Shown one piece after another: positions 21,656 to 56,953 of a stretch of 64,000 bases of DNA. This stretch comes from Ostrea edulis (lineage: Eukaryota): assembly GCF_947568905.1 (NCBI RefSeq), contig NC_079167.1:13826001-13890000 (forward strand). The letters are read 5' to 3'. A program made the position numbers and the translations under genes. The stretch's first letter is position 1, and every line of letters starts with the position of its first letter. The notes beneath the pieces are model-generated. The model searched no databases and was not told the DNA's origin. It saw nothing but the letters and a program-made list of their open reading frames with translations.

Positions 21656-24600
21656 ATGGGTTCCGCTTTAGAGGAAAGGCTGCAGCGAATAGAAACAAAG
21701 CTTGATCAAATGTTGGAGCACATGTTGAGCAGAACTCAACCGCGGAGTGTCGTCAACGGTACCATAAACATGATTACAATATAGCTGTTTTAATAATTAG
21801 AAAAAATAGAATTCTTGATTTCTCTGTTACAATGTGTAGGCCAATACTTTGAATTTGGCACATACGCAATCTATTTAAAATTAGATGTTGGATCCGCTCG
21901 CATACTCGCTACATAAACGATGTTTGTGTAGCGAGTATGCAAGCGGATCCAACATCTAATTTCAATTAGAATGGCACATAAGTTGAGATAGTACACATGT
22001 ATGTTCTCAAACATTTGCTTTTAGAACAATAGGGAAGGGGGGAAATGATTATATGAGTACTATATTGACAACGAAATAACACATTGTCTTAGCACTTACA
22101 ATCAATGAAGATACAACACATTGTCTTAGCACTTACAATGAAGATACAACACATTGTCTTAGCATTCACAATGAAGATACAACACATTGTCTTAGTACTC
22201 ACAATGAAGATACAACACATTGTCTTAGCACTCACAATGAAGATACAACACATTGTCTTAGTACTTACAATGAAGATACAACACATTGTCTTAGCATTCA
22301 CAATGAAGATACAACACATTGTCTTAGCACTTACAATGAAGATACAACACATTGTCTTAGCACTCACAATGAAGATACAACACATTGTCTTTGCACTTAC
22401 AATGAAGATACAACACATTGTCTTAGCACTTACAACCAATGAAGATACAACACATTGTCTTAGCACTCACAATGAAGATACAACACATTGTCTTAGCACT
22501 CACAATGAAGATACAACACATTGTCTTAGCATTCACAATGAAGATACAACACATTATCTTAGCACTTACAATCAATGAAGATACAACACATTATCTTAGC
22601 ACTCACAATGAAGAAACAACACATTGTCTTAGCATTCACAATGAAGATACAACACATTGTCTTAGTACTCACAATGAAGATACAACACATTGTCTTAGCA
22701 CTCACAATGAAGATACAACACATTGTCTTAGCACTTACAATGAATGAAGATACAACACATTGTCTTAGCATTCACAATGAAGATACAACACATTGTCTTA
22801 GCACTTACAACCAATGAAGATACAACACATTGTCTTAGCACTTACAATCAATGAAGAAATAACACATTATCTTAGCACTTACAATCAATGAAGATACAAC
22901 ACATTATCTTAGCACTTACAATCAATGAAGAAACAACACATTGTCTTAGCACTCACAATGAAGATACAACACATTGTCTTAGCACTCACAATGAAGATAC
23001 AACACATTGTCTTAGCACTTACAATCAATGAAGATACAACACATTGTCTTAGCACTCACAATGAAGAAACAACACATTGTCTTAGCACTCACAATGAAGA
23101 AACAACACATTGTCTTAGCACTCACAATGAAGATACAACACATTGTCTTAGCACTTACAATGAAGATGCAACACATTGTCTTAGCACTCACAATGAAGAT
23201 ACAACACATTGTCTTAGCATTCACAATGAAGATACAACACATTATCTTAGCACTCACAATGAAGATACAACACATTGTCTTAGCACTCACAATGAAGATA
23301 TAACACATTGTCTTAGCACTTACAATGAAGATACAACACATTGTCTTAGCATTCACAATGAAGATATAACACATTGTCTTAGCACTCACAATGAAGAAAC
23401 AACACATTGTCTTAGCACTCACAATGAAGATATAACACATTGTCTTAGCACTCACAATGAAGAAACAACACATTGTCTTAGCACTCACAATGAAGATACA
23501 ACACATTGTCTTAGCATTTATACAATCAATCTGGAGCTTTTATTCGTTTACTCTGCAAAAAAGTAAAAGTCACAGCCATGACAGAACTTGCATTTGTTAG
23601 ATTTCTGGAGTGTTTTGAGTTCTGTGAGAAACAAATGATTTTAATCTATAGATCATCCTGTGTCACACCACAAAACAGCGCTGAGGAAGGTCCACATGAG
23701 ACTGGTGGGAGACTTTCATCTTGAATCAGAAATAGACAAACTTATTCAACACGACGTCATCAGACGTGAAACGTGGGACGAAATAAAGATGCACAGCAAC
23801 AGAACAAATCAATTGCGATTGTTTCTACTAAAACTAGGCTCCTACGACGCAACGAAATTCGAAGCTTTTCTTGACGTTCTGAAGGAATCACACAGTCACA
23901 TAGCTGAGGAGCTCAGTCGTTATAAGGCTGACACTGAAGACAATGATGCCATTTTGTTTGGGGATGACGGGATGGATATATCCTGTATAAGGTGTGAAAT
24001 TTCCAGACGAGTACAGCTAGAGGAGGTCATAGATGAATTATTTTCCCGAGGAATCATAGGCGCCACAGCACTCCGGAAATACATCGAACCAAACTCGGAA
24101 TTCAAAGGTAGTAAAGTCTGGAAGTACGTGTTTGAGAATTTGAAAAACCTTCAAAGAAATAACGTCAACGTTTCCAAGACGATGCGAGAAATTCTTGCCA
24201 AGAATTACTGCGATATCGCTGACAGCCGCCATATTGTTGGACATTGTTCATGGGACTGCTCATGTGAGACGTTGCAAATTTCGACACAAAGACGAGTGTA
24301 CTCCAGCAGCGATGCAAGTTCTGTTATTGCTCAAAAATGTGCTACCCGTTCGAATTCCCCGGATATAGAGGTCTTCATTGAAGCACCCAACGCGAGAAAC
24401 GAGAAACCTAGTACTCCAAACCCGCCAGAGGATCATGCATCCACATCACACTATCCAAGAACTCCTCAAATAGTGATAACGACGAATGATGACGTACCGA
24501 TGACGGGTGTAACGACGAATGATGACGTACCGATGACGGGTGTAGGTTATAAAGATCCTCCCAGAGAAATCTCGTCTAAAATAGCAACACATAATGACAC

Positions 24601-24850
24601 AAAGCATTCGTTGAATCTTCCTTCAGGTGGACCAATCACAAAGAACTGGGCACACATATCCGGTAATCATCAGGAAGATGTTACTTACACAAACCCATGT
24701 TATGATGGTTCGCTTTCTGCATCAGTCGATGGTCTGATTCCTTCTTTAGTTGAAGATGGTCAAAAACGTAATACCAGGGCCCCAACAAAAGACGATATCT
24801 GGCAAAAGTTCTTCCCAGGAACTCAAGTTAATGCCGAGTCATTGCTCTGA
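21656..24850 (+). CDS. Coiled-coil plus tandem death-fold (CARD-like) protein, paralogue 1, ~433 aa
   Basis: Exons 21656-21758 (MGSALEERLQRIETKLDQMLEHML..., phase 1) and 23652-24850 join in frame. HKTALRKVHMRLVGDFHLESEIDKLIQHDVIRRETWDEI...NQLRLFLLKL...FEAFLDVLKESHSHIAEEL fits the CARD pattern. A CIRC linker, a second helical unit (VQLEEVIDELFSRGII) and a disordered S/T/P tail follow. Confidence 0.78.
21879..21961. repeat. 83-nt near-perfect hairpin in the intron of CARD-like gene 1
   Basis: AATTAGATGTTGGATCCGCT...AGCGGATCCAACATCTAATT, with an inner stem GCATACTCGCTAC / GTAGCGAGTATGC. Confidence 0.7.
22070..23530. repeat. 33-bp minisatellite, ~43 copies, with 37-bp variants
   Basis: Unit AATGAAGATACAACACATTGTCTTAGCACT(C/T)AC, with an occasional AATC/AACC insertion. 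It explains all ORFs at 22089-23566. Confidence 0.95.
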
Positions 24851-32058: not shown

Positions 32059-33912
32059 TTATAAGTATCATAGTAACAGTGATTATGACGTCAAAGTAAG
32101 CGGAACGTTAAATGTCTATATTGTGACGTCATGGATAATGTACAACAATGATCTGGAAAAAGTACGGGAAAATCATAGGCAATTATAAAAGACTATTAAG
32201 TTTTGGCTTTAGAATACCAATAAAATGTTTTTCTTTTTCCCGTCTCTGAATAGCACTGGCACATCTGAGTTTATAAAATGGGAAAATGTTAAATCGTTTT
32301 TTACCACACGTTTCCAGGTGTGCACTTAACTGGATTTGTCTGTATTCAGGTGTACTGATGTGCTGCTTATGCACACGTACACGGGCACGGAGAGTGTTGC
32401 CAGTTTCACCAATGTAATATTCCTTGCATCCAGGACATGTGATGGCGTATATGACATCCTTTGTATCGCATGACATGTTAGCATTAACTTTAAATTCTCG
32501 TCCGTTAAAATTATAACTGGTCCCTTCTGTAATGTAGTCACATGTACCGCATCGAGGGTCCGTACACTTTGACACTGTATAAGTACGGTCATCTAATTGG
32601 GAGGAACAAAGTATTCTCTTAAGATTTTTGGGCTGGCGTTTACTGCTAATAAAACGACAGTTCTTGTATATGCCTTTTGTTTGTTCATCTTCCTTAAGTA
32701 GCTTGTTTAATTCATAAACAATTGAATTGATGTTTTGATTTCTCGGATTATAAGTGTGTACAAATGGTATTATTTCTCCATCAATTGCATGATAGACAAA
32801 CTTCTAGGAAAAGTTACGCGTGCGCCGTAAGAAAAAATTCTACAAATATTCCTACAGTTACAGTGGATCTCCCTATGGAAAATACACCTGGGCCATCATT
32901 TTCTAAAGGAATAAATTCATTTTCGGGAAAACGAAAAAATACAAATAAGAATCAATACGAGAATTCTATATCCAAAAATCAAATCTCTCGTAGTCCTATT
33001 CCGCAATATCGACAGATCCCTAAGCATCACAAAGCTATAAACAGGCGGAATCAGGACAATAGCGGACAAAATGAAAATAACCGAGGGTATAGTAGAAATA
33101 GACGTCCACCAAACTTTTACAGAAACGAAAGAACCACGTATATCGGAAGAGGGGTACGCAACTATTTTTTAGGAGGAGGCAAAATGAGCCAAGGTCAGAG
33201 ATACAAGAACCTAATACCACGGTTATCAACAACAGCAATTCAAGGGATACACCCAGGAATATAATTAAGACAGAACCAAAAGTATTTAATCTTTCTGATA
33301 GACAACTAACGGATTCCGAAATAAAACTACTGTCTAAGGGTCTAAAATACACCCCTACACCTCATGTCAATAACCAAGAGCTTAAAACGGATGTTAAAGC
33401 TTATACTCGGCGACTCAGACTACATGAATATTTTCATGAAAGTGAGACCAGTGAATCTGATTCCGAGTCTACAGAGACAGAGCCAACAAACCTTGTAAGA
33501 AATAAATCAAAGTTTAATTCCTGTCTGGATAAGGAAATATATATCAAAATTCTCCGACAATTTAACGGAAAAAGAAGCAGCATTCTTACTCAATTTTGAG
33601 GTAAAAACAAGTAGTTTTTATGGACTACCAAAAATCCACAAATCTAAGCAAATTCAAAACGGAATACAGAAATCATGTGAACCATACATCAAAATACCGC
33701 GCCCAACAGATCTTAAACTACGCCCAATCGTAGCTGGCCCTTCTTGTCCAACACAAAGACTTAGTAATTTCCTAGATATTATACTAAAACCCATCTGCAA
33801 AATAGTTCCGAGTTATATTCGGGACGACATGGATTTCTTAAACCACATTCCTAAAATCGTTGAAGAAAATACAAAATTGGTGAGTTTTGATGTCACAAGT
33901 TTGTATACAAAT

Positions 33913-34451
33913 TTCTCACATTATCACCAGTGTGAGATCGACTTTACCCATGTGAGACAGCTATGTGAGATTTTTCTGTCTCACACTGCTGCGACGTCAT
34001 TTGATTGTGACGTCATATATTTTCTATGATTTACGTTACATTGTGAAGATTTACGTTACACGATGAAGCAAAAATATTTTGCATTGTTATCTTTAAATTT
34101 TAATGTATATAGTTTCTGTTGGACAACCTTGGGTTTTTTAGTTTACACTTACAGTGTAAACCATTTTCGGATACGCTCTTTCTGCCTATCTAATTAGTTT
34201 TTGCATCGAGGTTCAAATGAGGATTTTGATAATTTAGAATTTTCTCAAAGCTCCTAAATTTATGCACTAAACTGTAGGTAAAATGTGAGAAAAATAATCC
34301 TTCATTATTAACTCGTGTGGGGCAGGGAAATTCCACCTCTGGAACAAGATTCGCTGTCTAGGACTCGGCAAAGCCTCGTCCTAGACTGCGAATCTTGTCC
34401 CCTCGGTGGAATTTCCCTATCCCACACTCGTACTAATGAAAGATTTTATTT
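33913..34451 (+). mobile_element. Non-autonomous IR-plus-hairpin element (type example C) inserted in the RT gene
   Basis: Splits ...TAT ACA AAT | ATC CCA CAC (YTN|IPH) with no target duplication. IR TTCTCACATT / AATGTGAGAA and a ~150-nt hairpin at ~34300-34445. Confidence 0.8.
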
Positions 34452-36042
34452 ATCCCACACAACTTGGGTATAGAAGCCATTTCCTTCTGGATTGATAAAC
34501 ATCAAAGTGTATTACAATCAAGATTTTCAAAGGAATTTATCTTGGAAGGAATCAAAATAGTTTTGGAAAATAATCATTTCTTTTTTGATAACAAATACTT
34601 TCTTCAAACAAAAGGAACAGCCATGGGGACAAAAGTCGCCCCCACTTACGCAACTTTAGTTTTTGGGTTTTCTTGAGGAGAAACTATTTACAGAATGCAA
34701 ATCAGTTTTTGGAGAAGAATTTGGCCTATATATTGAGAATAACTGGAAACGCTATTTGGATGACTGCTTTATTTTTTGGACCAAATCTTTACAAGATCTA
34801 CAGCACTTCCACAACATGCTGAATCACCTACACGATAACATACGATTTACAATGGAAATTAACGAAAATGAATTACCTTTTTTAGACATCCTGATTGTAA
34901 AGGAGGGGGTGAAAATCATAACAGATCTCTACTACAAGAATACAGATTCCCATCAATATTTGATGTTTAACTCATGCCATCCATCTCACACCAAACGAAA
35001 CATCCCTTTTAACATGGCCCGGAGAATTTGCACAATAGTAATAGATGAGGATCACAGAAATACAAGATTATCTGAACTTAAGATATTTTTATGCAGACAG
35101 AAATATCCACCAAAATTAATTGAAACAGTTATACAAAAGGCTAAAGAAACTCCCACCACAGAATTGTGAACTACTAAACAACATGAAGAAACCAACAACA
35201 AAATTCCTTTCGTTCTTACACACAACCCGAGAGGTCACAACATATTCAAAACAGCCAAGCAGTTATTCCCTATTCTTCAACAATCAGAAACATTAAATGA
35301 CCTCATTCAGCCCACGGATATACTCCACAGCAGACGTCAACCACCAAATTTGAAAAAATTCTCACTAAAGCCAAATTTACATCAAACCCCGAAAAACCAG
35401 CAATCTTCAAATGCGAGGATCCACGATGCGGTACTTGCCAATTTATACAAACCGGACACTCCATAACTTTCAAAAACGGAATGAACTTCAATGTAAATTC
35501 AACTATGACGTGTAAATCTAAAAATCTACTTTATTGTATGACGTGCCCTACATGTGGAGAAAACTATATAGGTCAAACAGGAACCAAATTGGCTGACCGT
35601 GTTCGTGTACATAAACAACAGATCAGAGATCCTACAATAAGAAACACACCGTGTAGCGGACATTTTGATTCGTGCGGGGAAGGCAGTTTTTATATTTTCC
35701 CATTTTACAAAGTAAAAGAGGAAATTGAACAATTACGCAGAGCCAAGGAAAACTATTTCATAAAACTGTTTGAGCCGAAACTAAACTGTTAATATTTTTA
35801 CTTCATGTTATTTAACATGTACATTTTACATAGAATGTCTCCTTTAATGTACAGGAATTCAGAAGTGCTTAAAACTTATAGACTGAACTGTTTTAAATAA
35901 TTATGTATGTATTTTTAAAAGTGCCTAACATTAACATTGTATAATGTTCTGACGTCACAATCATGACTGTATTATGTTTAACGTTGCCGGCATAACGTCA
36001 CGAGGATGACGTCATAATGGAACTTGTTTACATTGTTTAAAA

Positions 36043-36991: not shown

Positions 36992-39900
36992 CACCTTTGA
37001 AAACGCCTGTACCTAAACAGGAACCTATGATTAATCCTTAAGCTTATCAATAATAGAGATAATTTTTCCAGGAATTCCAATTTGAATATACCATTGAATA
37101 AATCCAGAATCCGGTGGAAGGAAAAAAGTGAAGGGATGGGTTAACATCCCCGCGATAATATTCACAATTTACTATTAGCATACATCCGAATTACTCCACG
37201 CAAAGATGTTGCATTTTCTGAGTAACTGAGAAACGTGTTTTTAGTTGAAATTTTGAAAACGGTCACCTATGAATTCATCCACCTCGATACGATCCGAAAT
37301 ATGAATTGTACACATGTTAAATCTGTTCAATGCGCATGCGTATAGTTACAATAAGTACAATATTATTGGGGTTCAATGAAGGGTTTTTCACTCTAAAACT
37401 ATAAACACCTGTTTTAAAACAATGTTATTCAATGCATTCCATCTATCTGGATTTGTCAATTTGGCCGCCTTGACTAGTAACATCTTATGACAAGAGACAT
37501 CCATTGTTTTGTTTTTGAAATGTCATTAGTATCACGGTATGTTGTCTTAGATACGGGACTGGTACCTCTCCGTCGTGAGGCGCGTGCTAGTCCCGTATCT
37601 AACGTAATAGACCATTTCCATCTTGTATCCCTTGCGAATATTTGAATTTCAAACGAGAATTTTTAATGTTGAATTCTGTTGAAACTGTTTCAGACCAGCG
37701 GTGTGTATGTTCCTTTATATGAAAGGTTTACATCAACATGTTCAGTATTTCATTACACTTTATATTAACGAGTACAAATTCATGTTATCTATATGTTACG
37801 TCTTGGCAGCTCTTCACCTTGGTTCCTCTTTTCATCCACAGATTTTCACGTCAAAGTCCTTCAGAAGAACCACAAAGTGCTTGTAAATGAATTGTGCATT
37901 CGGGGACCCGTCATTGATGATCTTATCGAAAACGAGGCTATTTATCATTCAGATCAGGAAACAATAATGTCATGCGGCCGGCTCCCAGAAAGATCAGATA
38001 AGAAGTCTTTTGATGTGTCTTTCACGTTACGGTGAGGATAATTTCCTAAAGTTCGTAAAGGCGTTAGACACAGAGCGTCCAGATTTGGCCAAAAATCTCC
38101 ACGGCGATTTTGAAAGACAAAAGTCTGAACACTCCGAAGAGAATATAACCTGCATAAAATGCTGTATCTACAATCTAGTTGACATCAAAGATGTTGTTGA
38201 TGATCTGTATTCTAAAGGTCTTGTAGACTACTCATTCCTGGATCGAACTCTCGCAACGCCAGTTCGCAATGCGCGAAGGCAACTTTGGAACGAAGTATTT
38301 CTGAGAATGCGATCTGAAACAGATGATAATCGAAATAAATATTATGAAGCCTTAAAAGATGACATTCTAAAAAAGTACAAAAGTGTTTTCTCTCACTTTC
38401 CTGATTTTGACATCAACGAAAACACAATGAAATGCTTGTGTAAAGGGAAGTCATATGCTGAATCCACTTCTTCAAACCCAGAAAATGATCTTCCTTCATC
38501 AAAATTGCAAAACTCGGCTGAGGTGGAAGAAACTCCGTCCACACCGACCGTTACTCAAGTTCGTCGGCGCCCAAAGCTAAGAAAGAGGCGGAATGTTACA
38601 CCTAAAAGCAGGGTACCAGATCTCCTCCTCGCCAATGTGTTACATAAGTGGTTCAAATCTTTCCACAAGCGACAGAACACATGTAGCACAGATCTTAGTT
38701 TTGGCTTGAGCGAGGATGCGAGGAACAGCCAGATTATTAATGAGGATCCTGCAGTCTTACGCAAACAGCGTATTTTTAGATACAAAGAAGATAGTGGATT
38801 TGCTTCCTGTGAAATGAGCTCCGTAGATGTTGCTGATGAAAAAAAGAATGAAGATTCTGCCATACGGAGAGTTACAGAAGAGAAAGCCTCTGAAAAGTCT
38901 ACATGTACTCATTGATTCACGCCATTAAGCTATACCACACATACTTAAATGCATATGGACCAAAGGCAGCTGCTAATCAACTGTAGGAAGATTTGGACGA
39001 AAAATTATGACAATGACAAGCGTTCCAAATCTTACATTTACCTAATCGCACGCTTTCAACTGTTTGTATCAGAGTAATGACATCAACTTTGAATTTGTAA
39101 TTTACAGTATGTACACTGGAGGAGGGAGTGTTCCATAGGTCCCTAAAGAAAAGCGTTTCTCCAAATTAGTCTTAGTGTGCGATATTTCAAAGGTTTCTTG
39201 TGTTTCTTTGGGTATCATTTTTTTTTTTATCGCATTCAAAGAATTCCTCTGCAAGGTTTTACAGGTTAAAGATGTAACCGTTCTACAGAGACGGAGGGGA
39301 AAATGCAGATCTCGACCTCAGAAAATATGGAAAACTATACAAGGGAATTCGCCATGCCTACCTGGAGGAGTTTGCTTATTTGTTTGTTTTTGCAAGCTTT
39401 ACCGAAGAAAAGTAATTGATAATAATACGTGTTGTTATACGATGTAGACCTAAGGTGGACCTACAACACATTTATATTATCGCCATATGTGAATTTATCT
39501 AAAGAAAATTAAATGTGAATTCATTATCGCTGAATGGTATTTTGAGAAAATTGTCAGTGTGATATACGTTTTGAAATTGAGCCATATATTCATGGTAATT
39601 TCAATACATAGGTTGGTTATGTGTAATTTGTATACCAGCGTCTTGCAAGTGTATAGTGATTGCGTAGAGTTCTATACAATAGTGAAATATGTGCCGCCAT
39701 CTCTATTGTTGATATATTCAAAATGACCTACTGTGTTTAGAGAGCGATGCTTTTATTTCAATCACCCACTCTATGCTGTGTACTTCAGACTGTTGTCGAT
39801 ATTTATTTATTTTAAATAAATAAATACTCTGTTGAATGGGATTGTTACAGCATTAATACTGCCATATTTCACATATACATGTCAACACGATCCCAGTGTG

Positions 39901-44400: not shown

Positions 44401-47400
44401 TGCTCAGAGTCATTTCTCAATTCTACTATGAGAAAAGTAATGAACACAGTCTCTTCTAATCGAATACGTGTGGTGCTAACCAATAGAATATTCTATACAG
44501 GTCTTGGTGCCAGTCCATACAGCTAAATGCCGACCGACCACCGGAGTTCGTCTTCAGTGACGAGGGAACTCAACAACAACCGATAAACACAGACTGGAAG
44601 GTGTGTAATATAAACACGGTCATGTAATTCGCATGCATTTGCACAATAAAACTATACTTAAGATATTAAACGAGCCATATACATTACAATTATACATTAC
44701 ATTTTTAAAAACTCAAATGAGGGATTTCGATCTAGTGAGCACAATTTGCCATGATATGTGATATATACAAAGTATAATACGGGACTTTCGAGATACGGAT
44801 CCACTCTGACTTTTATCGCGCGTTGAACGTAATTTGTAGGGCATGTCACTTCCGGATTACAATAACAACTAAGTAAACAAGCATGGAATACTTCATTTAC
44901 TATCAAATTCCTGCATTTAAATGCTATCTTCGAAAGTAAGGAATCACTACAACCATTTTATAGGAAAATGCATTTGATTAAATTATGTGAGTTGGCGAGG
45001 GAAATAAAAAAGGGAATATCTTGAGGATGTCGGTAAAACTTCACGCCTTGCATCCAATGATACGCATCTAAATACGCCTTTTCCCTTTCATCTAACTTAC
45101 TCCCAGGTATTAAGCACAAATAGTGACTTGGATCGTCATCATAGGACATCGCTATAGCTCTTTACGGGCCGACTGCTAGCGAAACACAATTTGTATCAAT
45201 GTCAACTTTGCCCTACAATTGGTTATTATCACGTGACCGTGGTGTATAAAAGTCAAATATAATCGGTCGTTCCGGCACATCATGAAAGTTCCGTATTACA
45301 TCCTGATTTTTATTTCGCATCAATTGCAACAAATAATCAACTTGTATGATGATTACTGAGGGTAAAATAAAATGGAGATTTCATTTTCTAACATTTAATC
45401 CTCGTTATTACTGCCAATTTTCTATATTAAAAAAATATGCTTGTGTTGTTATCGATAATAAATAACTGATTATGAAAATTCTTCAAACATCAAGAAATGT
45501 CAGAGTTGCATATATGTAGGGGACTGCCCGGGTTGACATCAACATCACTGATATAGATGGTCCTGACAAACAACAACTGGTCGACCAGTTCTCATTCAAT
45601 TACACAGACAAGGGAAGACGGACTCAGAAATTCCAGGAACTGGTTTTAAATGGTTCACGTCAGAGGCCATCAAGGTATCGCTCATAATCTTTTATGCTAC
45701 TTGTATTCATTTGATAAAGGTAAATACGTAACATACATTGATTTAATGAATTACAGGTACAAATTAGTTAGATGCAAAACATTTAAATATGACTTTTGTA
45801 TCTAAACACAAATTCACACTGAGGTTCTTATTTATATTTAAACACGAATTCACACTGAGGTTCTGACTAGTATTTGAACATGAATTCATCCTTATATTTA
45901 AACACGAATTCACACTGAGGTTCTAACATGTATTTGAACACAAATTCACACTGAGGTTCTTACTTGTATATGAACATGAATTCATACTGAGGTTCTAACT
46001 TGTATTTAAACACAAATTCACACTGAAGTTCTTACTTGTATTTGAACATGAATTCATACTGAGGTTCTTACTTGTATTTAAACACGAACTCACACTGAGG
46101 TTGTAACTTGTATCTAAACAGAAATTCACACTGAGGTTCTTGCCTGTATTCAAACATAAATTCTGACATTTCTTAATTTAAATCATCAATTCATTCTGCG
46201 ATACTTACTTGTATTTAAACTTAAAACTAGACCGAAATTATTGCTTGTATCCAAACATGAATTCAAGCTGAAGTTTTTGCATATATTCACACATGAAGTT
46301 AGACTGAGCTTGTATCAAACCTGAATTCAGATTGAAGCTGTCTATGGCAGTGCAGTGTGGGACTTATTACTACGGTGATGAGTGTTCCGTGTTCTGTATT
46401 CCCTCTGTGGATTGTAAGGGCCATTACTCGTGTGATGAGCAGACGGGCACTAAGATCTGTGACCAGGGCTGGGAGGGAACGAACTGCACCAAGCCTAAGG
46501 CCGGGGAAGGAAGCTGTCAAGGTGTGACACAGGGACATTGTGACAAGAAAACGTGACCAGTAAAGCCAATAAAGAAAGGCGAAAAACACGAACGATTTAA
46601 AAATCATCGTATTATAACATCTTGGTTTAGTAATGTTCAATTATATGCAGATGTTATTCCATCTCTTTTTCTTTACGACCAACGTATATATTCATCTTAG
46701 ATGATATTCAGTTTCGAATTTTCCAAAGTGAAAAATAAGAGTAAATGTTATTTTGAATGTGTATTGTAGAGCAGCGCTGTAAGAACGGTGGTACTTGTTC
46801 CATGAACAAGTTCAGTAACTCATCTAATAATGCCTTCTTCTGCTGCTGTCCGCCCGGATTCACTGGAAACGAGTGTGAAATAGACATCAACGAGTGTGAT
46901 CAGACGCCCTGCCAATATGGTGGCGTATGTCACAAAATTCCCGGAAGCTACATCTGTAACTGCCATCCGAGGTATTGATAGACAGACTGTCAAGCTTATA
47001 GTTGAAGTATCTTTTATTCAAAATGTTATGCATGGATAAAGGATTTGAAGAAAAAAACCCACCCAAGAATCAGTATTTTGAAAAATCTTTCCCCCTCTTT
47101 CTAGGAGGAGAGTGGTGAAAATATTAGAAGTTTGTTATATTTATTGTAATGTTGACGTGTATTCAAATGATTATGATTTTATTTGTCAGATATCGCGGAA
47201 TGAATTGTGAAATTCCAACGAAATGTGCTGATAATCCATGTAAAAATGGAAAATGTGAGGATGTGAAAGGAGGCACATTTGTGTGTCAGTGTGGTACATT
47301 TTTTTCGGGTATATTTTGTGAAAGCACAGTAACAACAACACCAAAAACAACCAGTACAAAAACTATAACGACAGATTCAACAACGAGCACAACCACCACG

Positions 47401-50400
47401 ACAACTCCAAAAACCACCACCACAACTCCAACCACCACCACCACCACAACTCCAACAACCACCACCACAACAACTCCAACCACAACAACAACTCCAACGA
47501 CAACCACCACCACCACAACTCCAACAACTACTATAAAAAGATCAACGCCCATGTCTGCTCTGACAACAGAAATATTGCCAACGACAACTTCTCTTCTAAA
47601 AACCACTGCTACTTCAGTGGAAATGACATCATCAATAAGGACTCCATCTGCTGGAGAGGTATCCTATAAATGTTCAGAAAAAAATGCATGCAGAAACAAT
47701 GGTAAATGTATTAATGATGCATGTCAGTGTCCAGTGGGATTCTCGGGAAAGCTTTGTCAGAGGGAAGTAATTGAATGTGAGGCTGACTCATGTTGGAATG
47801 GGGGATATTGTAATGATGCTGTAGGAAATTATTCTTGTGACTGTCCTAGTGGCTTTGTAGGGTTTAAGTGTGAAAAGCATGTTGGAAATACTACATTGTC
47901 ACCATCAACTAGTGCATGTGGGTTTTGTGGTAATGGTTCTTGTTCTATGTTGAATAATGGGACTGTTGTATGCATGTGTAGACCTGGATTTAGTGGGAAG
48001 ACTTGTACCCACTCACAAGATATGTGTCGTCCTTTTTCAGATGCTTTATGTTTTAGAGATAGTGAGTGCATGGTAAAGTCATTTCGCCCACATATGGAAG
48101 TTTGCCCAAATAGCTGGAAAGGTCCACTTTGCAGAAATGGATCCATACCCTTATCTCGAGACGGGGAATGTCCACGAATTGTATGCAAGAACGATGGACA
48201 CTGTTATAATGGGAAATGCTGTTGCAGACCAGGATATAAAGGCGAATTCTGCGAGGAGGAGGTGCTACTTTGTGATAGTAATCCATGTAAAAGTAACACA
48301 ACATGTATCAATCTATTCAATGATTTTATATGCAACTGCCCAGTGGGATTGACTGGTAAATTATGTGAAGTGTCTCTCGTACATCCGACATCTACATCTT
48401 CAACACATCGTGTCCAGCCAGTCTCAACTCAACATATTACGCCTCCTCTACCATCCACAACAACCACCAATTCAGCATCACTAGAAACAAGATCTATCGT
48501 CCTGACAAAAGATATACCCCGGGGAGGAACAACCGAATTATTGACCAAAGCAAAACCTGTATCGAACAAACCCATTACAACAGAGGTAAAAACAACCCAT
48601 TTGATGACCACCCCAACATCACCTATTGTGTCAAGTACTGCAGCAGCATTAGAAACGACAAATAAAATTCCATCAACTGAATCAGCAACTCCAACCACAT
48701 TAACCAAGGCTAGTCCTTTATCAACAGAAGAAATTACACAACGAATGAGCTCGGTGAGGAATAGCTGGGGGTATACACTTTTTAAAAAATTGAATTAAAG
48801 TAATCGATATTTTTAGTTATATGTTCAAATGCCATATGTAGTATATTTTGTTTTTGTTTATTCAATGATTTGTAATATTTTGAAGTAATTAATTAACCTA
48901 AAAGCTCACGGACTTACATGATAACGACGACGCGTTTGAGAAAACCCATTTCTCACAAATTGAAATGTACATTGAGAATGTTCACCCTGACAACATATTA
49001 TTGAATGCTTATTTTTGGGTAGGATGAACAATTTGGGAATTATAATGATAATTACTCGTTTGCTCATACTTTGAACCTCTTAATCTGATTGCTTGTCTTA
49101 AGCCAGCAATATTGTCTTAATGGATCCACAAAACGGAACGGAACCATAAAAACAACGTAAGGCTCTGGTCCAACAAGTGTTGCAGTAACTTACTATTTGC
49201 TCGCTTTATTAGTTGGGTCTGCTTTTTAAATAGAACCTGCATAAATGCATGGTAGAACTAAATGTAATTGCATGTAAATGAATGGTACCTCTACAAATAT
49301 AACAGATTGAATTAATGAGTTTCCTCTATCCACAACAGCAGAATATAACACATATTCAAGCTTTTTATTTCAGAAGCCCATGTTTTCGGTTGGTTTTTCG
49401 AAAGCGTCGCCAGCAAGTACTCTGTCTGTTTCTAAACAGAGATCGTCAACATCGACTTCTGAATCCAGTGACAGAATATCGTCGTCGTCAGCTACCGTAA
49501 CTGCAACGACAGTGCAATCAATCCCTCCTCACAATGGAGGGAACAACTCGGTGACGCTTAGTGGCAAAATTCCAGATAAGGACATTCCAATCGTACAAGA
49601 AGTGATGACAAACGCCGTCAAAAACACTTCGAAAGGTAAAATATGTATTCATTCACATGAATGAATTGTAAATAGAAAGTAAATCCTTTTTGGATCAGGT
49701 CCCTATCTACTGAACATGCGTTTTGTAAAATGTTGTAAAAATAAGTTGTTTTTTTATAGGCGAGAACTGCACGGATATTAATATCTTGGACACGGAATAT
49801 CTTTACAATATTTCTGGGTAAGAGGATATTATTGTAAAGTTTAATAAATATATCCATGTGTTGTATTTTTACAGCTAAAATACGAAAATATCGGTAAATT
49901 AATTTTTTTTTAGGATACTTTGTGAATTAGATTTCTGTATTCGTTGGGGCGCGCTTGATTTGTCTACACCGGTCACAAAGAGTACACTTTCCCGTAATCA
50001 AGTGCAAAGGTGTACACCACCTACACCCTATACATGGCATGTGTTGGTAAATGCACCGAAAACTTAAATATGATTGAAAAAAGGTGAGGCGGAAAATTTG
50101 CCGATTTATCCCTCAGTATGTTAAGTACATAATAGGACAATTCCAGTGTATTGTATGTAGTGATTTACTAGAGTTTAAAATGTATTTTAAAGAATAAATG
50201 TAAACGATGCTATTTCGTACAATCATCAAAAACAACTTGGCGCCAAAATTATTACCAGCATTATTATTTGCACTTTAATTACATTAAAATCGTGAACAAC
50301 ATAAAACAAGAAATCCTCTCCAAAAATCTCTTCAGCCGCTGTTACAGTTCAACGTCCATATTGAATATACACGTACACTGCAACCAACAGCAATTGATTA

Positions 50401-53400
50401 TAAGCCATAAGGTGTAAATTGACCAAACGCGCCCAAAGTGTACAGTATTGACAATTTTGTCATAACTTCCTGTTTCATAGTACTGTATGCAAACTTATTA
50501 TCGCCGCAGTTTAATTTTTGCTCTGTGTCAAAAACCGTGAAATTGAACCTGCAATAAATGTAATTGTAAAGAAAAAATAAGGAACGTATCAAAAGTTGTC
50601 TACTGTATTCATTTGATTTTGCTTTTGTTAGAAACGTCAATACGAAGGTGACCTATAACAGTTCAGATTGTCCAGACGCTTCAGACTTGCATAAGAATCC
50701 TAATCTCACGCAATCCATCAATAATCAGCTCGCTAACTCTGGTCAACTTAGTAGTCACGCCGTATACAACGGCAAAACGAAAGGACTGGGGCGGAGTTAC
50801 CACATCCCTCTGATCGGTTACGTGTACACTATCAACAGAAGAGGCATAAAAGACGCAATTAAGCGAGCATGGTCAAGTGCTGGTAGGAAATATTGGTTAT
50901 TTATTTATTTTGACTACGGATAACTCCGTCTACCAGATCAAGATATAGGGCTCACGGAAGTGTGAAGGGTCGACAGGGGATGCTTACTCCTCCTAGACAC
51001 CTGATCCCACCTCTGGTATATCCATGGGGTCCGTGTTTGCCCAACTCTCTATTTTGTATTGCTTATAGGAGTTATGAGATTGATCACTATTCGTTATGTT
51101 CACCTTTCATTACGGAATGCATTGTTACATTGCATCATCAAAGGAAAATGTATATTTGCTTTACATGTGATAGGAAACAAACAAGTTGATGTCCTCATCG
51201 TTGACGCTGCATACCAAATTGGACAGTATGGGTAAGGAACTTCATATCGTAAGAATTACTTATCAAAAATCAAACCAGAATATAGCCAATGGTTGCATCA
51301 GAATTGTCATTTTAGAAATAAAAAAATATACACACATATATCATGTTTATTTTCAGAATATACATAACGGATATGTCATATCTGGTTACTAGTGGCCTTG
51401 CATTTCTACAACCTAGACCGGAAAACATTCCGACAGAGAAGTCATTTGATAAGGAGTTCAAAACGGAATTTCCAGCTTTGCAGGTGTTGGTGTATTCTGG
51501 AAACGAGAGGTATAATTACGCCTCTGGATTACGCCTTTCTCTAAAGCAGAGGAAGAGATCCGCGCCCCTGTCAGTGGCTGATATACAGAGAAAAGCTCTT
51601 ACTGAGTGGGAAAACGTTATCAAAGGTAACGCATAACAAGAACGTGTACTATAATACTATCATCCAGCCTGAGCATTAGAGAAATGTAAATTTCACTTCT
51701 GTTATATTATTTGTGTTGTAGATGATGGGCGGTGTGCAAACCAGACCTGTAACATTGGATTAACTATTTCTCCTTTGGAGATCACAAAATCACGGTATTT
51801 CAAGACACATTCTATATTTAGGAAATAGAAGGATTTCAGAGTAGAGGGTTTCAATGAAACATTTCTGTTGCAGGTCATTCGATGTTGTTCTGTATCCAAC
51901 AATAAACAAATATCTCAACACAGAATCAACATTAATGACGGGGCTGAAAACCAGACTATCGCCTTATCATGAACGATGTAATGATTGCTCCAGATACCAT
52001 TATATAGATATAGTTGGGCGAATAAAACTCAGAGAGGAAAATGATATTGAAAATGCAACAAAAGTGGTTGTAGGTAAGTGGAAAGACTTTATTGATAAGC
52101 ATGCGTATTTTGATTCTTTCATTCCTGTGTAATCTAGATAATTACAATGTGTTTGTGTTTAATTAGGGGCTGTCGACACAAATTGGACGAAACTGTCTTT
52201 CGTTAGTGCTAAAAGGTAAACCTTCATCATTTTGATAATTTTCTTTTGGTTTGGACATTTTTTTAAGTGCTGCAAAAAATTAAAGAACTGTGTTTTTTTG
52301 TTTTTGTTTTAGTTCCTTGTCGACAAGACTATATTACTTACCCAGTAGTTTAAATGACACAATGGCGGGCTGGCCGCGCCCAAATATGGAGGGAAAGCTT
52401 GACTTGATTAATAGTTCTCTGAACAAGTTGAACCGAAAGCTAGCAATGCATAGAATGAGACGGCTGCATCAGTTAGTGATTATGGAAGCTGTGCCGACAT
52501 CAGAACAACACCATACCTTACACCTAATGGAAACAGCCTGGGCCACTGCAAACCAACGTAAGGAATCTGTACAGCTACACTACAGTCTTGTGATCTTTTG
52601 GTATTGATGACCATTAATTTGATTAAATTCCACGAATGTTTTGTTTTAACTGATAAATGTTTAACTTCATTTCAGATGTTCCTCAGAGAGATTTGACCAC
52701 TACCATCCAATCGTGGAACACAAATTATGTTTCCTTTCATGGGTAAGGAGAATTTCCTCTGTGCTGAAATGAATGAAATATGCCAATGTTATGCTGTGTT
52801 GTGGTTGATGTCTTTGATTATAACTTCTCCATTTAGAGATTCTGTGACACGAATAAAGTACACCATGGATATTCTGAATGCTGATTCCAGCATCGCAGCG
52901 TTATCCTCACCCAGTGTCGGGGTGATGGAGACGGTATTGAATTCCTCAGGTAAAACATACAGCGGCTGCAGAGCTTACCAGGTGAGAATGCTATGGATGA
53001 CGGACATGGAAGACCTCAACACAACATCAATAGAGAGCGCCGTGTCCAAAGCATGGATCAGTGCAAACAGCGGTAAGCATACATCCATTATACACGACAA
53101 CGTATATTTTCAACGTAATTATGATGTATCTTACTATGTTTGTTCTGAACATTTTAGGTTTTCAGCTCGTAATTCCTGCAACAGTTCTGAATTATGAAGC
53201 AGGATATGTTGCAGCGTCAGGGTAAGTAGATAGAGTCGTTCTCTGATGAAGAAATGTTCACTGCAGAAAAACAAATGCTCATAGATACGATTACCAGCAG
53301 TGGTCTTCATATTCAATAACAGCAATGATCTTCATATTCAATAACACCGATGGTCGTCATGTTGAATAACGCTTATTGTCTTCATACTAAATAACATCAA

Positions 53401-54005
53401 TGGTAAATTTGTTTTGGCAGAGAGAATGTTCGTATGTATACATATTTTATACAACCGAGGATAGGAAGCAAAAAAATCGATGAAGAAGATTTAGACGAGC
53501 CGTCCACTGTCGAATTAGAACAAGCACTATCAAAAACAGTACCTGGGTTACGCGCATTTCCTACTGCGTCCAAGAAATCAAATGGAACGGCATCAGATGG
53601 AACGGTATGTTCAACAAGACCCTGATTTGTTTTGACTACCGACACATTACTTACAGCATCTGATTTTAGGTGTATATTTCACAGATGCAATTCGTTATGG
53701 TTATCACTAATAAACCTCATCAAATGTGAAAGAAAAAAGATGTACTGTATAAAGGGTATTTTCAGCGGTAGGAAATTTTTGCGATTTAATCCATAAATGG
53801 TAGCAAATTATATTCTGCGTTTCCATTTTCTGCAGTTGCATTGTACCTTTTGCGACTGTAATTTTTGAGGATTTTTCCTATCCGCAGAAAATGGACGATC
53901 GCATAGAATACCCGTTATACGGGATGGGGTTTGCAAAATATATCTAAATGTATCATAAAAAGGTGCATATAGTATTTGAGATGAGACCGTTCATCAATGT
54001 TTTTG

Positions 54006-54038
<33 letters not shown>

Positions 54039-56953
54039 AGACGTTAAGCAAGATAGAATCAATCAATCAATAATTCGAGAATTGTTTACTTATATGGAAA
54101 CGGCGTCGAATGTAGACGAAGTGTTAGAAATGGTGACTAATGCATGGCGCTCAGGGCTGTAGCAGTACAACAGCTACGGCTTCGGGCAGTGGGGGTTCTT
54201 TAGCGTGCCACACCTACTATGACACGGGACTCGGGTCAAACGAAACAGCTGTTGTCCGAGGACACAGTCTATAACTGTTTTGTTATACACCTTCATTCTC
54301 TTGGGTTTTTTTTTTCTAGATGCACATGATTCTTTCATTTTGAACTTTTTAACAAGACAGTGTGATTGCGCACATTTATCAACGTGGGTTAGGTTTGATG
54401 TGTTACTGAGAGCGAGCGCCGTAACCACTAGTCGTGTTAGCGGTTATCCAGTCGTTAGTTGGCGTGAGAGACTACATATAGATCTATATCTATATATATT
54501 CTTGACAGGAATGGTGGGTGTACATAGTCATAGCTGTAGGATGTCTGGCGTTGGTTGTCATATTAACATCACTCTTGGTCACAGCACTGCGGGCTAGAAG
54601 GTATGTAACACCGCGTACTTAAAGTCTACCAAAGGTACATGTATATTTACATGTATTATAATTTGTTAATGATTAACGTAGCATTTCATTTGAATGATAT
54701 AAAGTTACATCCTTTACAAAAGAGTGGCAAATCGTCATAGTGTTTCAAATGAGAGTACGTCATTGGTGCAAAAATGAAATCCGATTGACGGTGTTGCCCC
54801 TTTACTGATTCGACATTTGTCTGGATTAGCTCTATGGAGCGCCAAATTAACATAAACTCAAATAATTGAAGATATCTTCAATTATTTGAAGATATCATCA
54901 ATTCATTTGATGCGCACAACAATTGAATTAAAGATCTCTTCAAATAATTAATGATATCTTCAATTCTGAATTATTTGCGCGCATTAATTGAATTGATGAG
55001 AGCATTAATTCTTCAGCTGATTTGATGCGCGATTTAATTGAATTAATGATCTCTTCAAATGAATTAATGATATCAACAATTGAATTGATGCGCGCTACAA
55101 TTCAATTGAAGAGAGCAATAATTCATATAATGCGCGCATTAAATCAATTGATGAGAACAATAATTGAATTGATGCGCGCATTAATTCATTTGATGAGAGC
55201 AATAATTGATTTAATGCGCGCATTAATTCAATTATTGCTCTCTTCAATTGAATTAATGATATCTTTAATTCATTTGAAGAGAGCAATAATTCTTTTAGAG
55301 AGAGCAACTATATAATTAAAGATATTTTCAATTCAACATATCCACAATTGAATTAATGATATCTTTAATTGAATTGTTGCTCTCTTTAAAAGAATTGATG
55401 CGCGCATTAATTCCTTATATAAAAGCATTGTAAATGATTTAAAGATATCTTCAATTGAATTAAAGAGATCATCAAATTATTTATACCGAGCTCTAAATTA
55501 ATTATTGCGAGCAATATTTCTACTAAATTGATGCTCTCATCAAATGAATTGAAGAGAGCAATAATTGAATTAATGCGCGCATCAAATCTATTATTGCTCT
55601 CATTAATTGAATTAATGCGCGCATCAATTGAATTGAAGAGAGCAATAATTGAATTAATGCGCGCATTAAATCAATTATTGCTCTCATTAATTCAATTGAT
55701 GCGCGCATTAACTCAATTGATGAGAGCAATAATTGAATTGAAGCGCGCATTAATTCATTTGATGAGAGCGATAATTGATTTAATGCACGCATTAATTCAA
55801 TTAAAGAGAGCAATAATTGAATTGATGATATCTTCAAATAATTGAAGATATCTTCAATTATTTAAGTTTATGTTAATTTGACGCTCCATATAGCTCAGTG
55901 AACTAAGACGGTGGGCTTTTATTCTGTCCTCAGTTATAATATATGTTCAGCATTCAGATTGTGATCGGTTTTATACTCAAAAGACATCACGTATAATCAC
56001 CAGGGGTCAGTGTCCTTCAGAATGCCGATCGCAACGACCTCGGGAAAGGTTGTTTTTTCGCTTGCCGGAAAGGCCCTAGAATGTGCATATGTGGAATGAA
56101 AGACAAAGGAATTAATCTTGAATGTTACACCCAAACGTGTGATGTCGCACAGAGAACGCGGAATAACTCCATCAAATATCTGGTATAAATAGAACCATGT
56201 AATGAATTAAAACAATTTTCCAATCACTTTCTAATATAAATATATAAACATTTACGACAAGACCTTGTAACACAATGATGTTTGATCTTTTGACCTTGGA
56301 ATTTGAAACCTCAGACCTGTTTGATATCTCCTGAACTATTTAAGGTAGGGCTTTCATATTTTGTATATATATGTAGATTCTTTATGGCAAGACCTTTAAA
56401 CTTTGTTGTTTGACCTTGTGATTGTGACATTGAACAACGGCAGGACCAAGATGGTTTAGCTGAGCGATGTAGCCCATAGACCTCTTGTTATTGACTTCGT
56501 ACAAAAATTTGAATTATTTGCTACATGAGCCAATCTACACCTCACTGTATTGCACATCTCTTACTGGCTTTATTTATGTCAAATTTGATCGGTGTGGTAT
56601 TCCTCCGTACTCTACACAAATAAAAAAAATCCCTTGGTATTCATTGTATCATCAAGCCAATAACATTTGTTTTATCCATATATGATCCATTTCCTCATGC
56701 ATTTTACCATTTTGCATTGCTTTTATTCAATAAGTTGCTATTATCAAATTCTATTATTAGTCATCGTCAGTCAAGAACGCTAAAACAGGACCCAAAACAA
56801 ATGAATGGATTTGACAAAGAACACTTCTCTAAAGAGCCCGTAATGGAGAAAAATTCCAATGGCCTTTACACCGTGGAGGACGAGGACACAGACTATTCCA
56901 AAACAACATACATAGTGAACAACGCAGCAGATACCGAGGCGTATCAGGAATGA
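41478..56953 (+). CDS. Delta/Serrate-like (MNNL-DSL-EGF) type I membrane protein with mucin stalk and six repeated juxtamembrane modules, ~1580 aa
   Basis: 22 phase-consistent GT-AG exons: 41478-41543, 42501-42664, 44501-44600, 45520-45674, 46331-46521, 46770-46971, 47190-48753, 49374-49635, 49760-49817, 50632-50882, 51174-51231, 51357-51625, 51722-51794, 51874-52073, 52167-52215, 52313-52557, 52676-52742, 52837-53072, 53158-53221, 53421-53604, 54509-54600, 56761-56953 (4743 nt). Signal peptide; LKEYNN...LYNGDCC (MNNL); CGTYYYGDECSVFC...GHYSC...C..GWEGTNC (DSL); ~9 EGF; TM WWVYIVIAVGCLALVVILTSLLVTAL. Confidence 0.85.
45800..46270. repeat. 36-bp minisatellite in intron 4 of the DSL-like gene
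   Basis: Unit ~AAACACGAATTCACACTGAGGTTCTTACTTGTATTT, about 10-12 degenerate copies. Confidence 0.85.
50905..51109 (+). mobile_element. 3' UTR remnant of the Penelope-like family seen at 10585 and 28000
   Basis: GATCAAGATATAGGGCTCACGG...GATGCTTACTCCTCCTAG...CTGATCCCACCTCTGG...TTCACCTTTCAT. Confidence 0.65.
53745..53922. mobile_element. Small MITE, Tc1/mariner-like
   Basis: TA then CTGTATAAAGGGTATT at the left end; AATACCCGTTATACGG at the right end (imperfect TIR). Confidence 0.45.
53975..54250. mobile_element. SINE fragments
   Basis: GGACGTCTCCATATGAGTGAAAAATTCTCG...(AATC)n tail on the plus strand, and a GCGCTCAGGGC...GTGCCACACCTACT block matching the SINE body. Confidence 0.5.
54833..55890. 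mobile_element. Non-autonomous foldback DNA transposon with 6-bp TSD (IS3EU-like), copy 2
   Basis: TATGGAG...CTCCATA termini, TAGCTC direct repeat at 54827-54832 and 55891-55896, same family as 4797-5775. Confidence 0.88.
56270..56487 (+). mobile_element. Helentron-like 3' fragment
   Basis: TTTGACCTT motifs and the end GAGCGATGTAGCCCATAGACCTCTTGTT. Confidence 0.45.

What the first reader, a model, noticed from the sequence alone, without database searches (positions are those of the whole stretch)
49560..53604. Six ~100-aa modules encoded by a strict short/long exon pair (phases 1-2-1), possibly SEA/ferredoxin-like
Seen: short exons of 49-73 nt alternate with long exons of 184-269 nt six times. 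Sequences are very diverged but repeat a strand, a helix often ending in W (IKRAWSSA, ALTEWENV, METAWATAN, VSKAWISAN), a V.V.I...Y...G strand, a T..(T/S)Y strand and a P...L...L helix. That beta-alpha-beta-beta-alpha order suggests a ferredoxin-like SEA fold, as in mucins, dystroglycan and the Notch heterodimerisation domain. It would give a ligand with force-sensing or sheddable modules (inference).
Basis: inference. Interest (0 to 1): 0.7.

Follow-up and report, generated by a model that had tools for sequence, protein, structure and literature searches.

The report
Six SEA-like stalk domains, Delta-like protein
The six short/long exon pairs are real and encode tandem copies of an unannotated, mollusc/annelid-restricted extracellular domain with a SEA-like (ferredoxin-type) fold that forms the membrane-proximal stalk of an oyster Delta-like, mucin-bearing membrane protein; nothing shows that the domains cleave themselves.

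Summary
Observation confirmed. Thirteen GT-AG exons give one open frame. Six short exons (58, 58, 73, 49, 67, 64 nt) alternate with six long ones (251, 269, 200, 245, 236, 184 nt), with intron phases 1, 2, 1, 2. Annotated proteins of four other oysters align at 58-66% identity with no indel at any junction.

The gene encodes a type I membrane protein: DSL, EGF repeats, Thr-rich mucin stretch, the six modules, a TM helix and a conserved tail.

A profile of the long exons finds 147 proteins. All named ones are mollusc, plus one annelid. Some are giant Delta-like proteins with up to 25 copies. Pfam matches none of 122 domain instances.

The SEA self-cleavage motif is absent. Domains 3 and 4 are too diverged to confirm. 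Force-sensing and shedding remain inference.

The scan noted this same stretch once more as a whole gene (s1-274702), not on other DNA.

The parts
49374..49635 (+). Exon 0: Ser/Thr-rich linker, then strand 1 and helix 1 of domain 1. Ortholog conservation starts at about 49542.
   Evidence: Splice sites and frame; ortholog alignment; domain bounds.
49760..49817 (+). Short exon S1 (58 nt, starts in phase 1): strand 2 of domain 1, ending at the hairpin residue.
50632..50882 (+). Long exon L1 (251 nt, starts in phase 2): strand 3, helix 2 and strand 4 of domain 1, then strand 1 and helix 1 (Trp helix) of domain 2.
51174..51231 (+). Short exon S2 (58 nt): strand 2 of domain 2.
51357..51625 (+). Long exon L2 (269 nt): rest of domain 2, then strand 1 and helix 1 of domain 3. 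Holds the dibasic KQRKRS site at 51544-51561.
51722..51794 (+). Short exon S3 (73 nt): strand 2 region of the diverged domain 3, with two Cys.
51874..52073 (+). Long exon L3 (200 nt): rest of domain 3 and start of domain 4. Both are diverged.
52167..52215 (+). Short exon S4 (49 nt): strand 2 region of domain 4.
52313..52557 (+). Long exon L4 (245 nt): rest of domain 4, then strand 1 and the Trp helix of domain 5.
52676..52742 (+). Short exon S5 (67 nt): strand 2 of domain 5.
52837..53072 (+). Long exon L5 (236 nt): rest of domain 5, then strand 1 and the Trp helix of domain 6.
53158..53221 (+). Short exon S6 (64 nt): strand 2 of domain 6.
53421..53604 (+). Last long exon L6 (184 nt, ends in phase 0): strand 3, helix 2 and strand 4 of domain 6 plus a short linker. 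It has no following strand 1 or helix 1, which fixes the domain register.
54509..54600 (+). Transmembrane exon: about 25 hydrophobic residues followed by Arg-Ala-Arg.
   Evidence: Hydropathy scan; sequence; tblastn of orthologs.
56761..56953 (+). Cytoplasmic tail exon with stop codon. It is 86% identical to the Saccostrea and Crassostrea tails and carries the motif DKEHFSKEP.
46309..46552 (+). DSL-domain exon of the same gene (approximate bounds).
   Evidence: Pfam DSL, E 1.2e-13.
47190..48753 (+). Large exon with EGF repeats flanking a Thr/Pro-rich mucin-like stretch.
   Evidence: Pfam EGF and EGF_TEN; ORF; splice sites.

Best explanation
The stretch encodes the membrane-proximal stalk of a type I membrane protein of an oyster. 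The protein is an atypical Delta-like protein: N-terminal Notch-ligand region, DSL, EGF repeats, Thr-rich mucin segment, stalk, TM helix, and a conserved tail of about 65 aa. The stalk is six tandem copies of a 93-110 aa extracellular alpha/beta domain that no domain library describes. The domain folds as beta1-alpha1-beta2-beta3-alpha2-beta4, a ferredoxin-type two-layer sandwich, and most resembles the SEA/MAD class of juxtamembrane domains. The structural domain is offset from the exon pair. It consists of the last third of one long exon (beta1, Trp-ending alpha1), the short exon (beta2), and the first two thirds of the next long exon (beta3, alpha2, beta4). The phase-1 intron lies in the alpha1-beta2 loop, where in domains 2 and 6 it splits a Gly codon. 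The phase-2 intron lies in the beta2-beta3 hairpin and splits the turn codon, which is Gly in four of the six domains. The exon pair is a symmetric phase 1-1 unit, so unequal crossing-over in the introns can add or remove one period; relatives carry from about 6 to more than 25 copies. Shown: exon model, family membership of domains 1, 2, 5 and 6, fold of domains 2 and 6 (on the ortholog), position next to the membrane, and restriction to molluscs and an annelid among named hits. Inferred: the array acts as a glycosylated spacer. Because N and C termini of this fold lie side by side, it may be a mechanically soft, extensible tether under the DSL/EGF head rather than a self-cleaving SEA module. 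Domains 3 and 4 are inferred to be degenerate copies.
Confidence: 0.72

Rival explanations
1. The modules are true, cleavable SEA homologues. One or more are cut, by autoproteolysis or by a proprotein convertase, so the DSL/EGF/mucin ectodomain is held non-covalently and can be shed by force, as in MUC1 or the Notch heterodimerisation domain.
For: The fold and the juxtamembrane, post-mucin position match cleaved SEA proteins. A dibasic site (KQRKRS in the window; QQRKRT or QQMKR[ST] in the orthologs) sits between strand 1 and helix 1 of domain 3 and is kept in all four oyster orthologs. Published SEA/MAD-like domains carry furin-type sites (PMC11527881).
Against: The hairpin lacks G/S[VI]VV. 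The Gly is 61% conserved, but the next positions are mixed (Ser 13% directly after Gly). In the window the turns read G-I, G-N, G-D, G-E, R-S and S-S. The dibasic site lacks Arg at P4 and lies in a domain that could not be confirmed as folded. No cleavage data exist.
Confidence: 0.15
2. The domain is a lineage-specific ferredoxin-like fold unrelated to SEA (convergent). Its role is binding or cis-dimerisation, as MAD12 dimerises PCDH15, rather than mechanics or spacing.
For: There is no sequence signal to SEA. Foldseek ranks only generic ferredoxin-like domains. The best VIA match of model 1 is the dimerising MAD12 (bioRxiv 10.1101/460097).
Against: Surface positions are poorly conserved between copies (about 12% mean column identity), and copy number varies from 6 to more than 25. 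That fits a spacer better than a specific binding site. Extracellular SEA/MAD domains head both VIA lists.
Confidence: 0.25
3. The pattern is a by-product of exon duplication in a disordered glycosylated linker, with no folded domain.
For: Pairwise similarity among the six modules is mostly at chance level. Domains 3 and 4 escape the profile.
Against: The AlphaFold2 models are confident. Hydrophobic periodicity and the Trp, Tyr and Gly positions are conserved over 122 instances. Ortholog identity is 58-66% across the region, against almost none in the adjacent Ser/Thr linker.
Confidence: 0.03

Closest known systems
SEA domains (Pfam PF01390; MUC1, MUC16, enterokinase, agrin, TMPRSS6, the Gpr126 ectodomain)
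   Different: There is no Pfam SEA match in 122 instances and no G/S[VI]VV cleavage motif. The family has its own signature: a Trp at the end of helix 1, a Tyr in strand 3 and a hairpin Gly. It is attached to a DSL/EGF head, an architecture not found in the literature searched.
Membrane-adjacent domains (MAD) of PCDH15, CDH23 and CELSR cadherins
   Different: MADs are single copies following cadherin repeats, whereas here there are six to more than 25 tandem copies and no cadherin repeats. Sequence identity is 5-8%.
Delta/Serrate/LAG-2 Notch ligands and the lophotrochozoan DSL expansion (PMC8166818)
   Same: The gene has a DSL domain and EGF repeats. Relatives have MNNL+DSL (Patella) and are named 'Delta-like protein' by UniRef.
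   Different: Canonical Delta has EGF repeats running straight to the membrane. The mucin segment and the SEA-like array are extra, and the tail differs. The paper on lophotrochozoan DSL genes does not mention these modules in the passages read.
Generic ferredoxin-like folds (ribosomal protein S6, ACT, the PheRS C-terminal domain, RAMP/Cas)
   Different: They are cytoplasmic, bind nucleic acids or small ligands, and do not occur as tandem extracellular juxtamembrane arrays.

Membership tests
SEA domain (Pfam PF01390) | Match to the family HMM | tested here: not met
   No match at E<=10 for the seven exon translations or for any of 122 whole-domain instances.
SEA domain (Pfam PF01390) | Alpha/beta sandwich of about 100-120 aa with order b1-a1-b2-b3-a2-b4 | tested here: met
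   AlphaFold2 models of domains 2 and 6 of the ortholog P0006 (pLDDT 89 and 79.9) show this order.
SEA domain (Pfam PF01390) | Structural similarity to solved SEA domains clearly above other ferredoxin-like folds | tested here: inconclusive
SEA domain (Pfam PF01390) | Autoproteolysis motif G/S[VI]VV in the b2-b3 hairpin (present in a subset of SEA domains) | tested here: not met
   The hairpin Gly is 61% conserved. The next residue is mixed (E 17%, S 13%, T 11%) and no [VI]VV follows. The window turns read G-I, G-N, R-S, S-S, G-D and G-E.
SEA domain (Pfam PF01390) | Extracellular, next to O-glycosylated regions and often near the membrane | tested here: met
   A Thr/Pro-rich exon and a Ser/Thr linker lie upstream. 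A TM helix follows about 8 residues after domain 6.
Cadherin membrane-adjacent domain (MAD) | Ferredoxin-like domain directly following extracellular cadherin repeats | tested here: not met
New lophotrochozoan repeat family (defined here by alignments A2 and A4) | Significant match of each window module to a profile built without orthologs | tested here: inconclusive
   Domains 1, 2, 5 and 6 match: i-E 5e-9, 2e-14, 1e-14 and 6e-11; hhalign probability 95-98%. Domain 4 is marginal (29%, in register). Domain 3 does not match (0.4%).
DSL (Delta/Serrate/LAG-2) ligands (gene context) | DSL domain plus EGF repeats in a type I membrane protein | tested here: met
   Pfam DSL E 1.2e-13 and EGF E 1.7e-17 on window exons; TM exon. 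Notch binding is not testable here.

The most novel reading that the evidence does not exclude
Molluscs and annelids have a class of giant Delta-like proteins whose DSL/EGF head sits on an array of 6 to more than 25 mechanically weak SEA-like domains. The array unfolds stepwise under load and sets or buffers the pulling force that the ligand can deliver to Notch (or another receptor). That would be a ligand-side force gauge mirroring the SEA-like heterodimerisation domain on the receptor side.
Probability: 0.08. Interest if true: 0.8.

Novelty: new variant of a known kind. Interest (0 to 1): 0.5.

Why it matters
The work defines a domain family that Pfam does not hold. All named members are annotated 'uncharacterized', 'hypothetical' or only 'Delta-like'. 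It assigns the family a SEA-like fold and gives its exact relation to exon structure. It also shows an unreported architecture, DSL-EGF-mucin-(SEA-like)n-TM, spread over bivalves, gastropods and an annelid. If the stalk is mechanically soft or cleavable, it bears on how force is handled on the ligand side of Notch-type signalling. At the least it improves annotation of a large lophotrochozoan gene family, and it is a clean example of a repeat period (the exon pair) that is circularly shifted against the folded domain.

Tried and rejected
1. Pfam on single exons gave nothing. That test was unfair, because an exon holds only part of a domain, so it was repeated on 122 whole domains with the same result.
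2. Direct pairwise Smith-Waterman comparison of the six modules was mostly at chance level, so the repeat had to be shown through relatives.
3. RNA support: no RNA run holds the stretch. The five holders look like DNA runs.
4. A profile-profile comparison against SEA was not possible. The own genome gives only two partial PF01390 exon matches containing stops, so no SEA alignment could be built from referenced sequences.
5. The ESM-Atlas feature search of domain 6 gave no usable hit.
6. Foldseek against PDB gave only generic ferredoxin-like folds at E>=3e-3 for both models.
7. The Pei and Grishin 2017 paper on divergent SEA domains is not held. It is cited only through papers that quote it.
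8. The alternative register, in which a domain starts with the long exon and ends with the next short exon, was considered. It was rejected because the neutral model pairs the short-exon strand with the following strand inside the first domain, and because the array begins with strand 1 and helix 1 and ends after strand 4.
9. The spliced window protein was never sent to a search or fold tool. Exons were searched by reference, and the joined step was left out. Exons were joined only inside local scripts, for alignment with fetched proteins and local HMM/hhalign runs. Folding used the database ortholog P0006 by reference.
Full report
OBSERVATION. Reading 49300-53900 and joining candidate exons in a local script gives 13 exons with AG acceptors behind pyrimidine tracts and GT donors, and one open frame. 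Six short exons of 58, 58, 73, 49, 67 and 64 nt alternate with six long exons of 251, 269, 200, 245, 236 and 184 nt. Short exons start in phase 1 and long exons in phase 2. Five pairs sum to a multiple of three, and the last pair ends in phase 0.

The model is not a reading artefact. Annotated proteins of Saccostrea echinata, S. cucullata, Crassostrea virginica and C. angulata align over about 630 residues at 58-66% identity, with no indel at any junction. A Lymnaea stagnalis gene has the same alternation, with exact-match stretches of about 54-78 nt alternating with 177-267 nt, then a TM exon and a tail exon. No RNA run was available for this species.

GENE CONTEXT. Upstream exons carry a DSL domain (Pfam E 1.2e-13). 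A 1.56-kb exon has EGF repeats around a Thr/Pro-rich mucin-like stretch. Downstream lie a transmembrane exon (54509-54600) and a tail exon ending at 56953. The tail is 86% identical to the Saccostrea and Crassostrea tails, more conserved than the ectodomain. tblastn of the orthologs places the first coding match at about 42498. The product is therefore a type I membrane protein: Notch-ligand-like head, mucin segment, the six modules, TM helix, tail. The modules sit directly outside the membrane.

A FAMILY, NOT A ONE-OFF. Pairwise similarity among the six modules is weak; only M1-M5 and M5-M6 reach z=6. A six-frame search of the same genome found a paralog on the same chromosome (G000:C4, about 64.965-64.995 Mb). 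It has at least 16 module-like long exons, the same phases, one exon in which short and long parts are fused, the same truncated last long exon and the same tail motif.

A profile of 22 long exons, all given by reference (A2), was searched against 1.84 billion cluster representatives. It found 147 proteins at E<=1e-3. Among them are giant proteins with 10-25 repeats from Potamilus, Patella (MNNL+DSL), Owenia (an annelid), Haliotis, Dreissena, Ruditapes and Aplysia (four DSL domains). Every named hit is a mollusc or that annelid, and all are annotated 'hypothetical', 'uncharacterized' or only 'Delta-like'. The unnamed hits carry no organism, so restriction to molluscs and annelids rests on the named hits only. 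Pfam recognises nothing in 122 extracted domain instances, SEA included.

REGISTER AND FOLD. Each period holds, in order: a strand (short exon), then a strand, a helix, two strands and a Trp-ending helix (long exon). [quoted passage not shown] The natural ends decide between them. Conservation starts in exon 0 with a strand plus helix, and the last long exon stops after strand, helix, strand. The domain therefore consists of the end of long exon n-1, the short exon n, and the start of long exon n.

A register-neutral AlphaFold2 job used 1.5 periods of the ortholog P0006, residues 861-1024, with 68 in-phase rows. It gave pLDDT 89 and pTM 0.80. Residues 1 to about 100 form b-a-b-b-a-b at pLDDT 92-98, and in the following half-period only helix alpha1 forms, at lower confidence. 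A single-domain job on the membrane-proximal domain 6 (P0006:1257-1373, 122 rows) gave pLDDT 79.9 and a clean E-H-E-E-H-E pattern.

The two introns of each period fall in the alpha1-beta2 loop and in the beta2-beta3 hairpin. The hairpin intron splits a turn Gly codon in domains 1, 2, 5 and 6; the loop intron splits a Gly codon in domains 2 and 6.

[quoted passage not shown] Others call it a SEA domain (PMC11527881).

CLEAVAGE. The SEA autoproteolysis motif is not present. The hairpin Gly is 61% conserved, but the following residues are mixed. A dibasic site, KQRKRS at 51544-51561, lies between strand 1 and helix 1 of domain 3 and is kept as RKR or KR in the four orthologs. It lacks Arg at P4. 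It is only a lead.

LIMITS. A profile built from 105 non-orthologous instances recognises domains 1, 2, 5 and 6 of the window protein (i-E 5e-9 to 1e-14; shuffles score at most 7 bits; hhalign probability 95-98%). Domain 4 matches only marginally (29%, in register), and domain 3 does not match. These two fit the exon pattern and, by eye, the hydrophobic pattern, and helix 1 of domain 3 is predicted helical in model 1.

The models are of a 66%-identical ortholog. The spliced window protein was not sent to any search or fold tool. Exons were searched by reference, and joining was done only in local scripts.

MECHANISM AND VERDICT. The best reading, at about 0.7, is a glycosylated juxtamembrane stalk of tandem SEA-like domains. 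It evolves by gain and loss of a symmetric phase 1-1 exon pair and holds a DSL/EGF head away from the membrane. Because the fold's termini are adjacent, the stalk would extend by unzipping under load; this step is inference. Self-cleavage is unlikely. Convertase cleavage or a binding or dimerising role cannot be excluded.

The family is undescribed at sequence level and the architecture was not found in the literature searched. The fold class and the logic (mucin plus SEA-like domain plus TM helix) are known, hence 'new variant of a known kind' and moderate interest.

Noticed in passing
G000:C4:64965000-64995000 (loci L010, L006, L009, L008): A paralogous gene on the same chromosome has at least 16 module-like long exons with the same intron phases. 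In one exon the short and long parts are fused (L008:6450-6740). One intron has a GC-AG donor (gcaagt after L006:8261). The last long exon is truncated in the same way, and the tail carries a related motif (DTEHFSEP).
   Followed up: partly
window 56761-56953: The cytoplasmic tail is 86% identical to the Saccostrea and Crassostrea tails, against 58-66% for the ectodomain. Its D-K-E-H-F-[ST]-x-E-P motif recurs in the paralog and in a Lymnaea relative (L013:15021-15197). This suggests a conserved intracellular partner.
   Followed up: partly
window 51544-51561: A dibasic KQRKRS site lies between strand 1 and helix 1 of domain 3. It is kept as QQRKRT or QQMKR[ST] in four oyster orthologs and is a possible convertase site.
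   Followed up: partly
window 23645-24847 and 37968-38912: These are long plus-strand ORFs upstream of the gene. The first carries a CARD domain (Pfam E 5.5e-10). The second has no Pfam match.
   Followed up: partly
window 22080-23563: A long minisatellite is open in several frames on both strands (unit reads ...HNEDTTHCLST...). It is probably non-coding repeat DNA.
   Followed up: no
window 32186-35789: Retroelement-like ORFs lie on both strands in the intergenic region. An earlier scan note calls them Penelope-like elements.
   Followed up: no
G000 whole genome (L011, L012): A six-frame search for canonical SEA (PF01390) in the 895-Mb genome gave only two partial exon matches over the cut-off. 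This is a lower bound, because SEA domains are split by introns.
   Followed up: no
L013 (Lymnaea stagnalis, P0110): This family member has six short/long exon pairs, a TM exon and a tail, but only a Ser-rich N-terminus and no DSL in the gene model. Either the model is partial, or the stalk also occurs without the ligand head.
   Followed up: no
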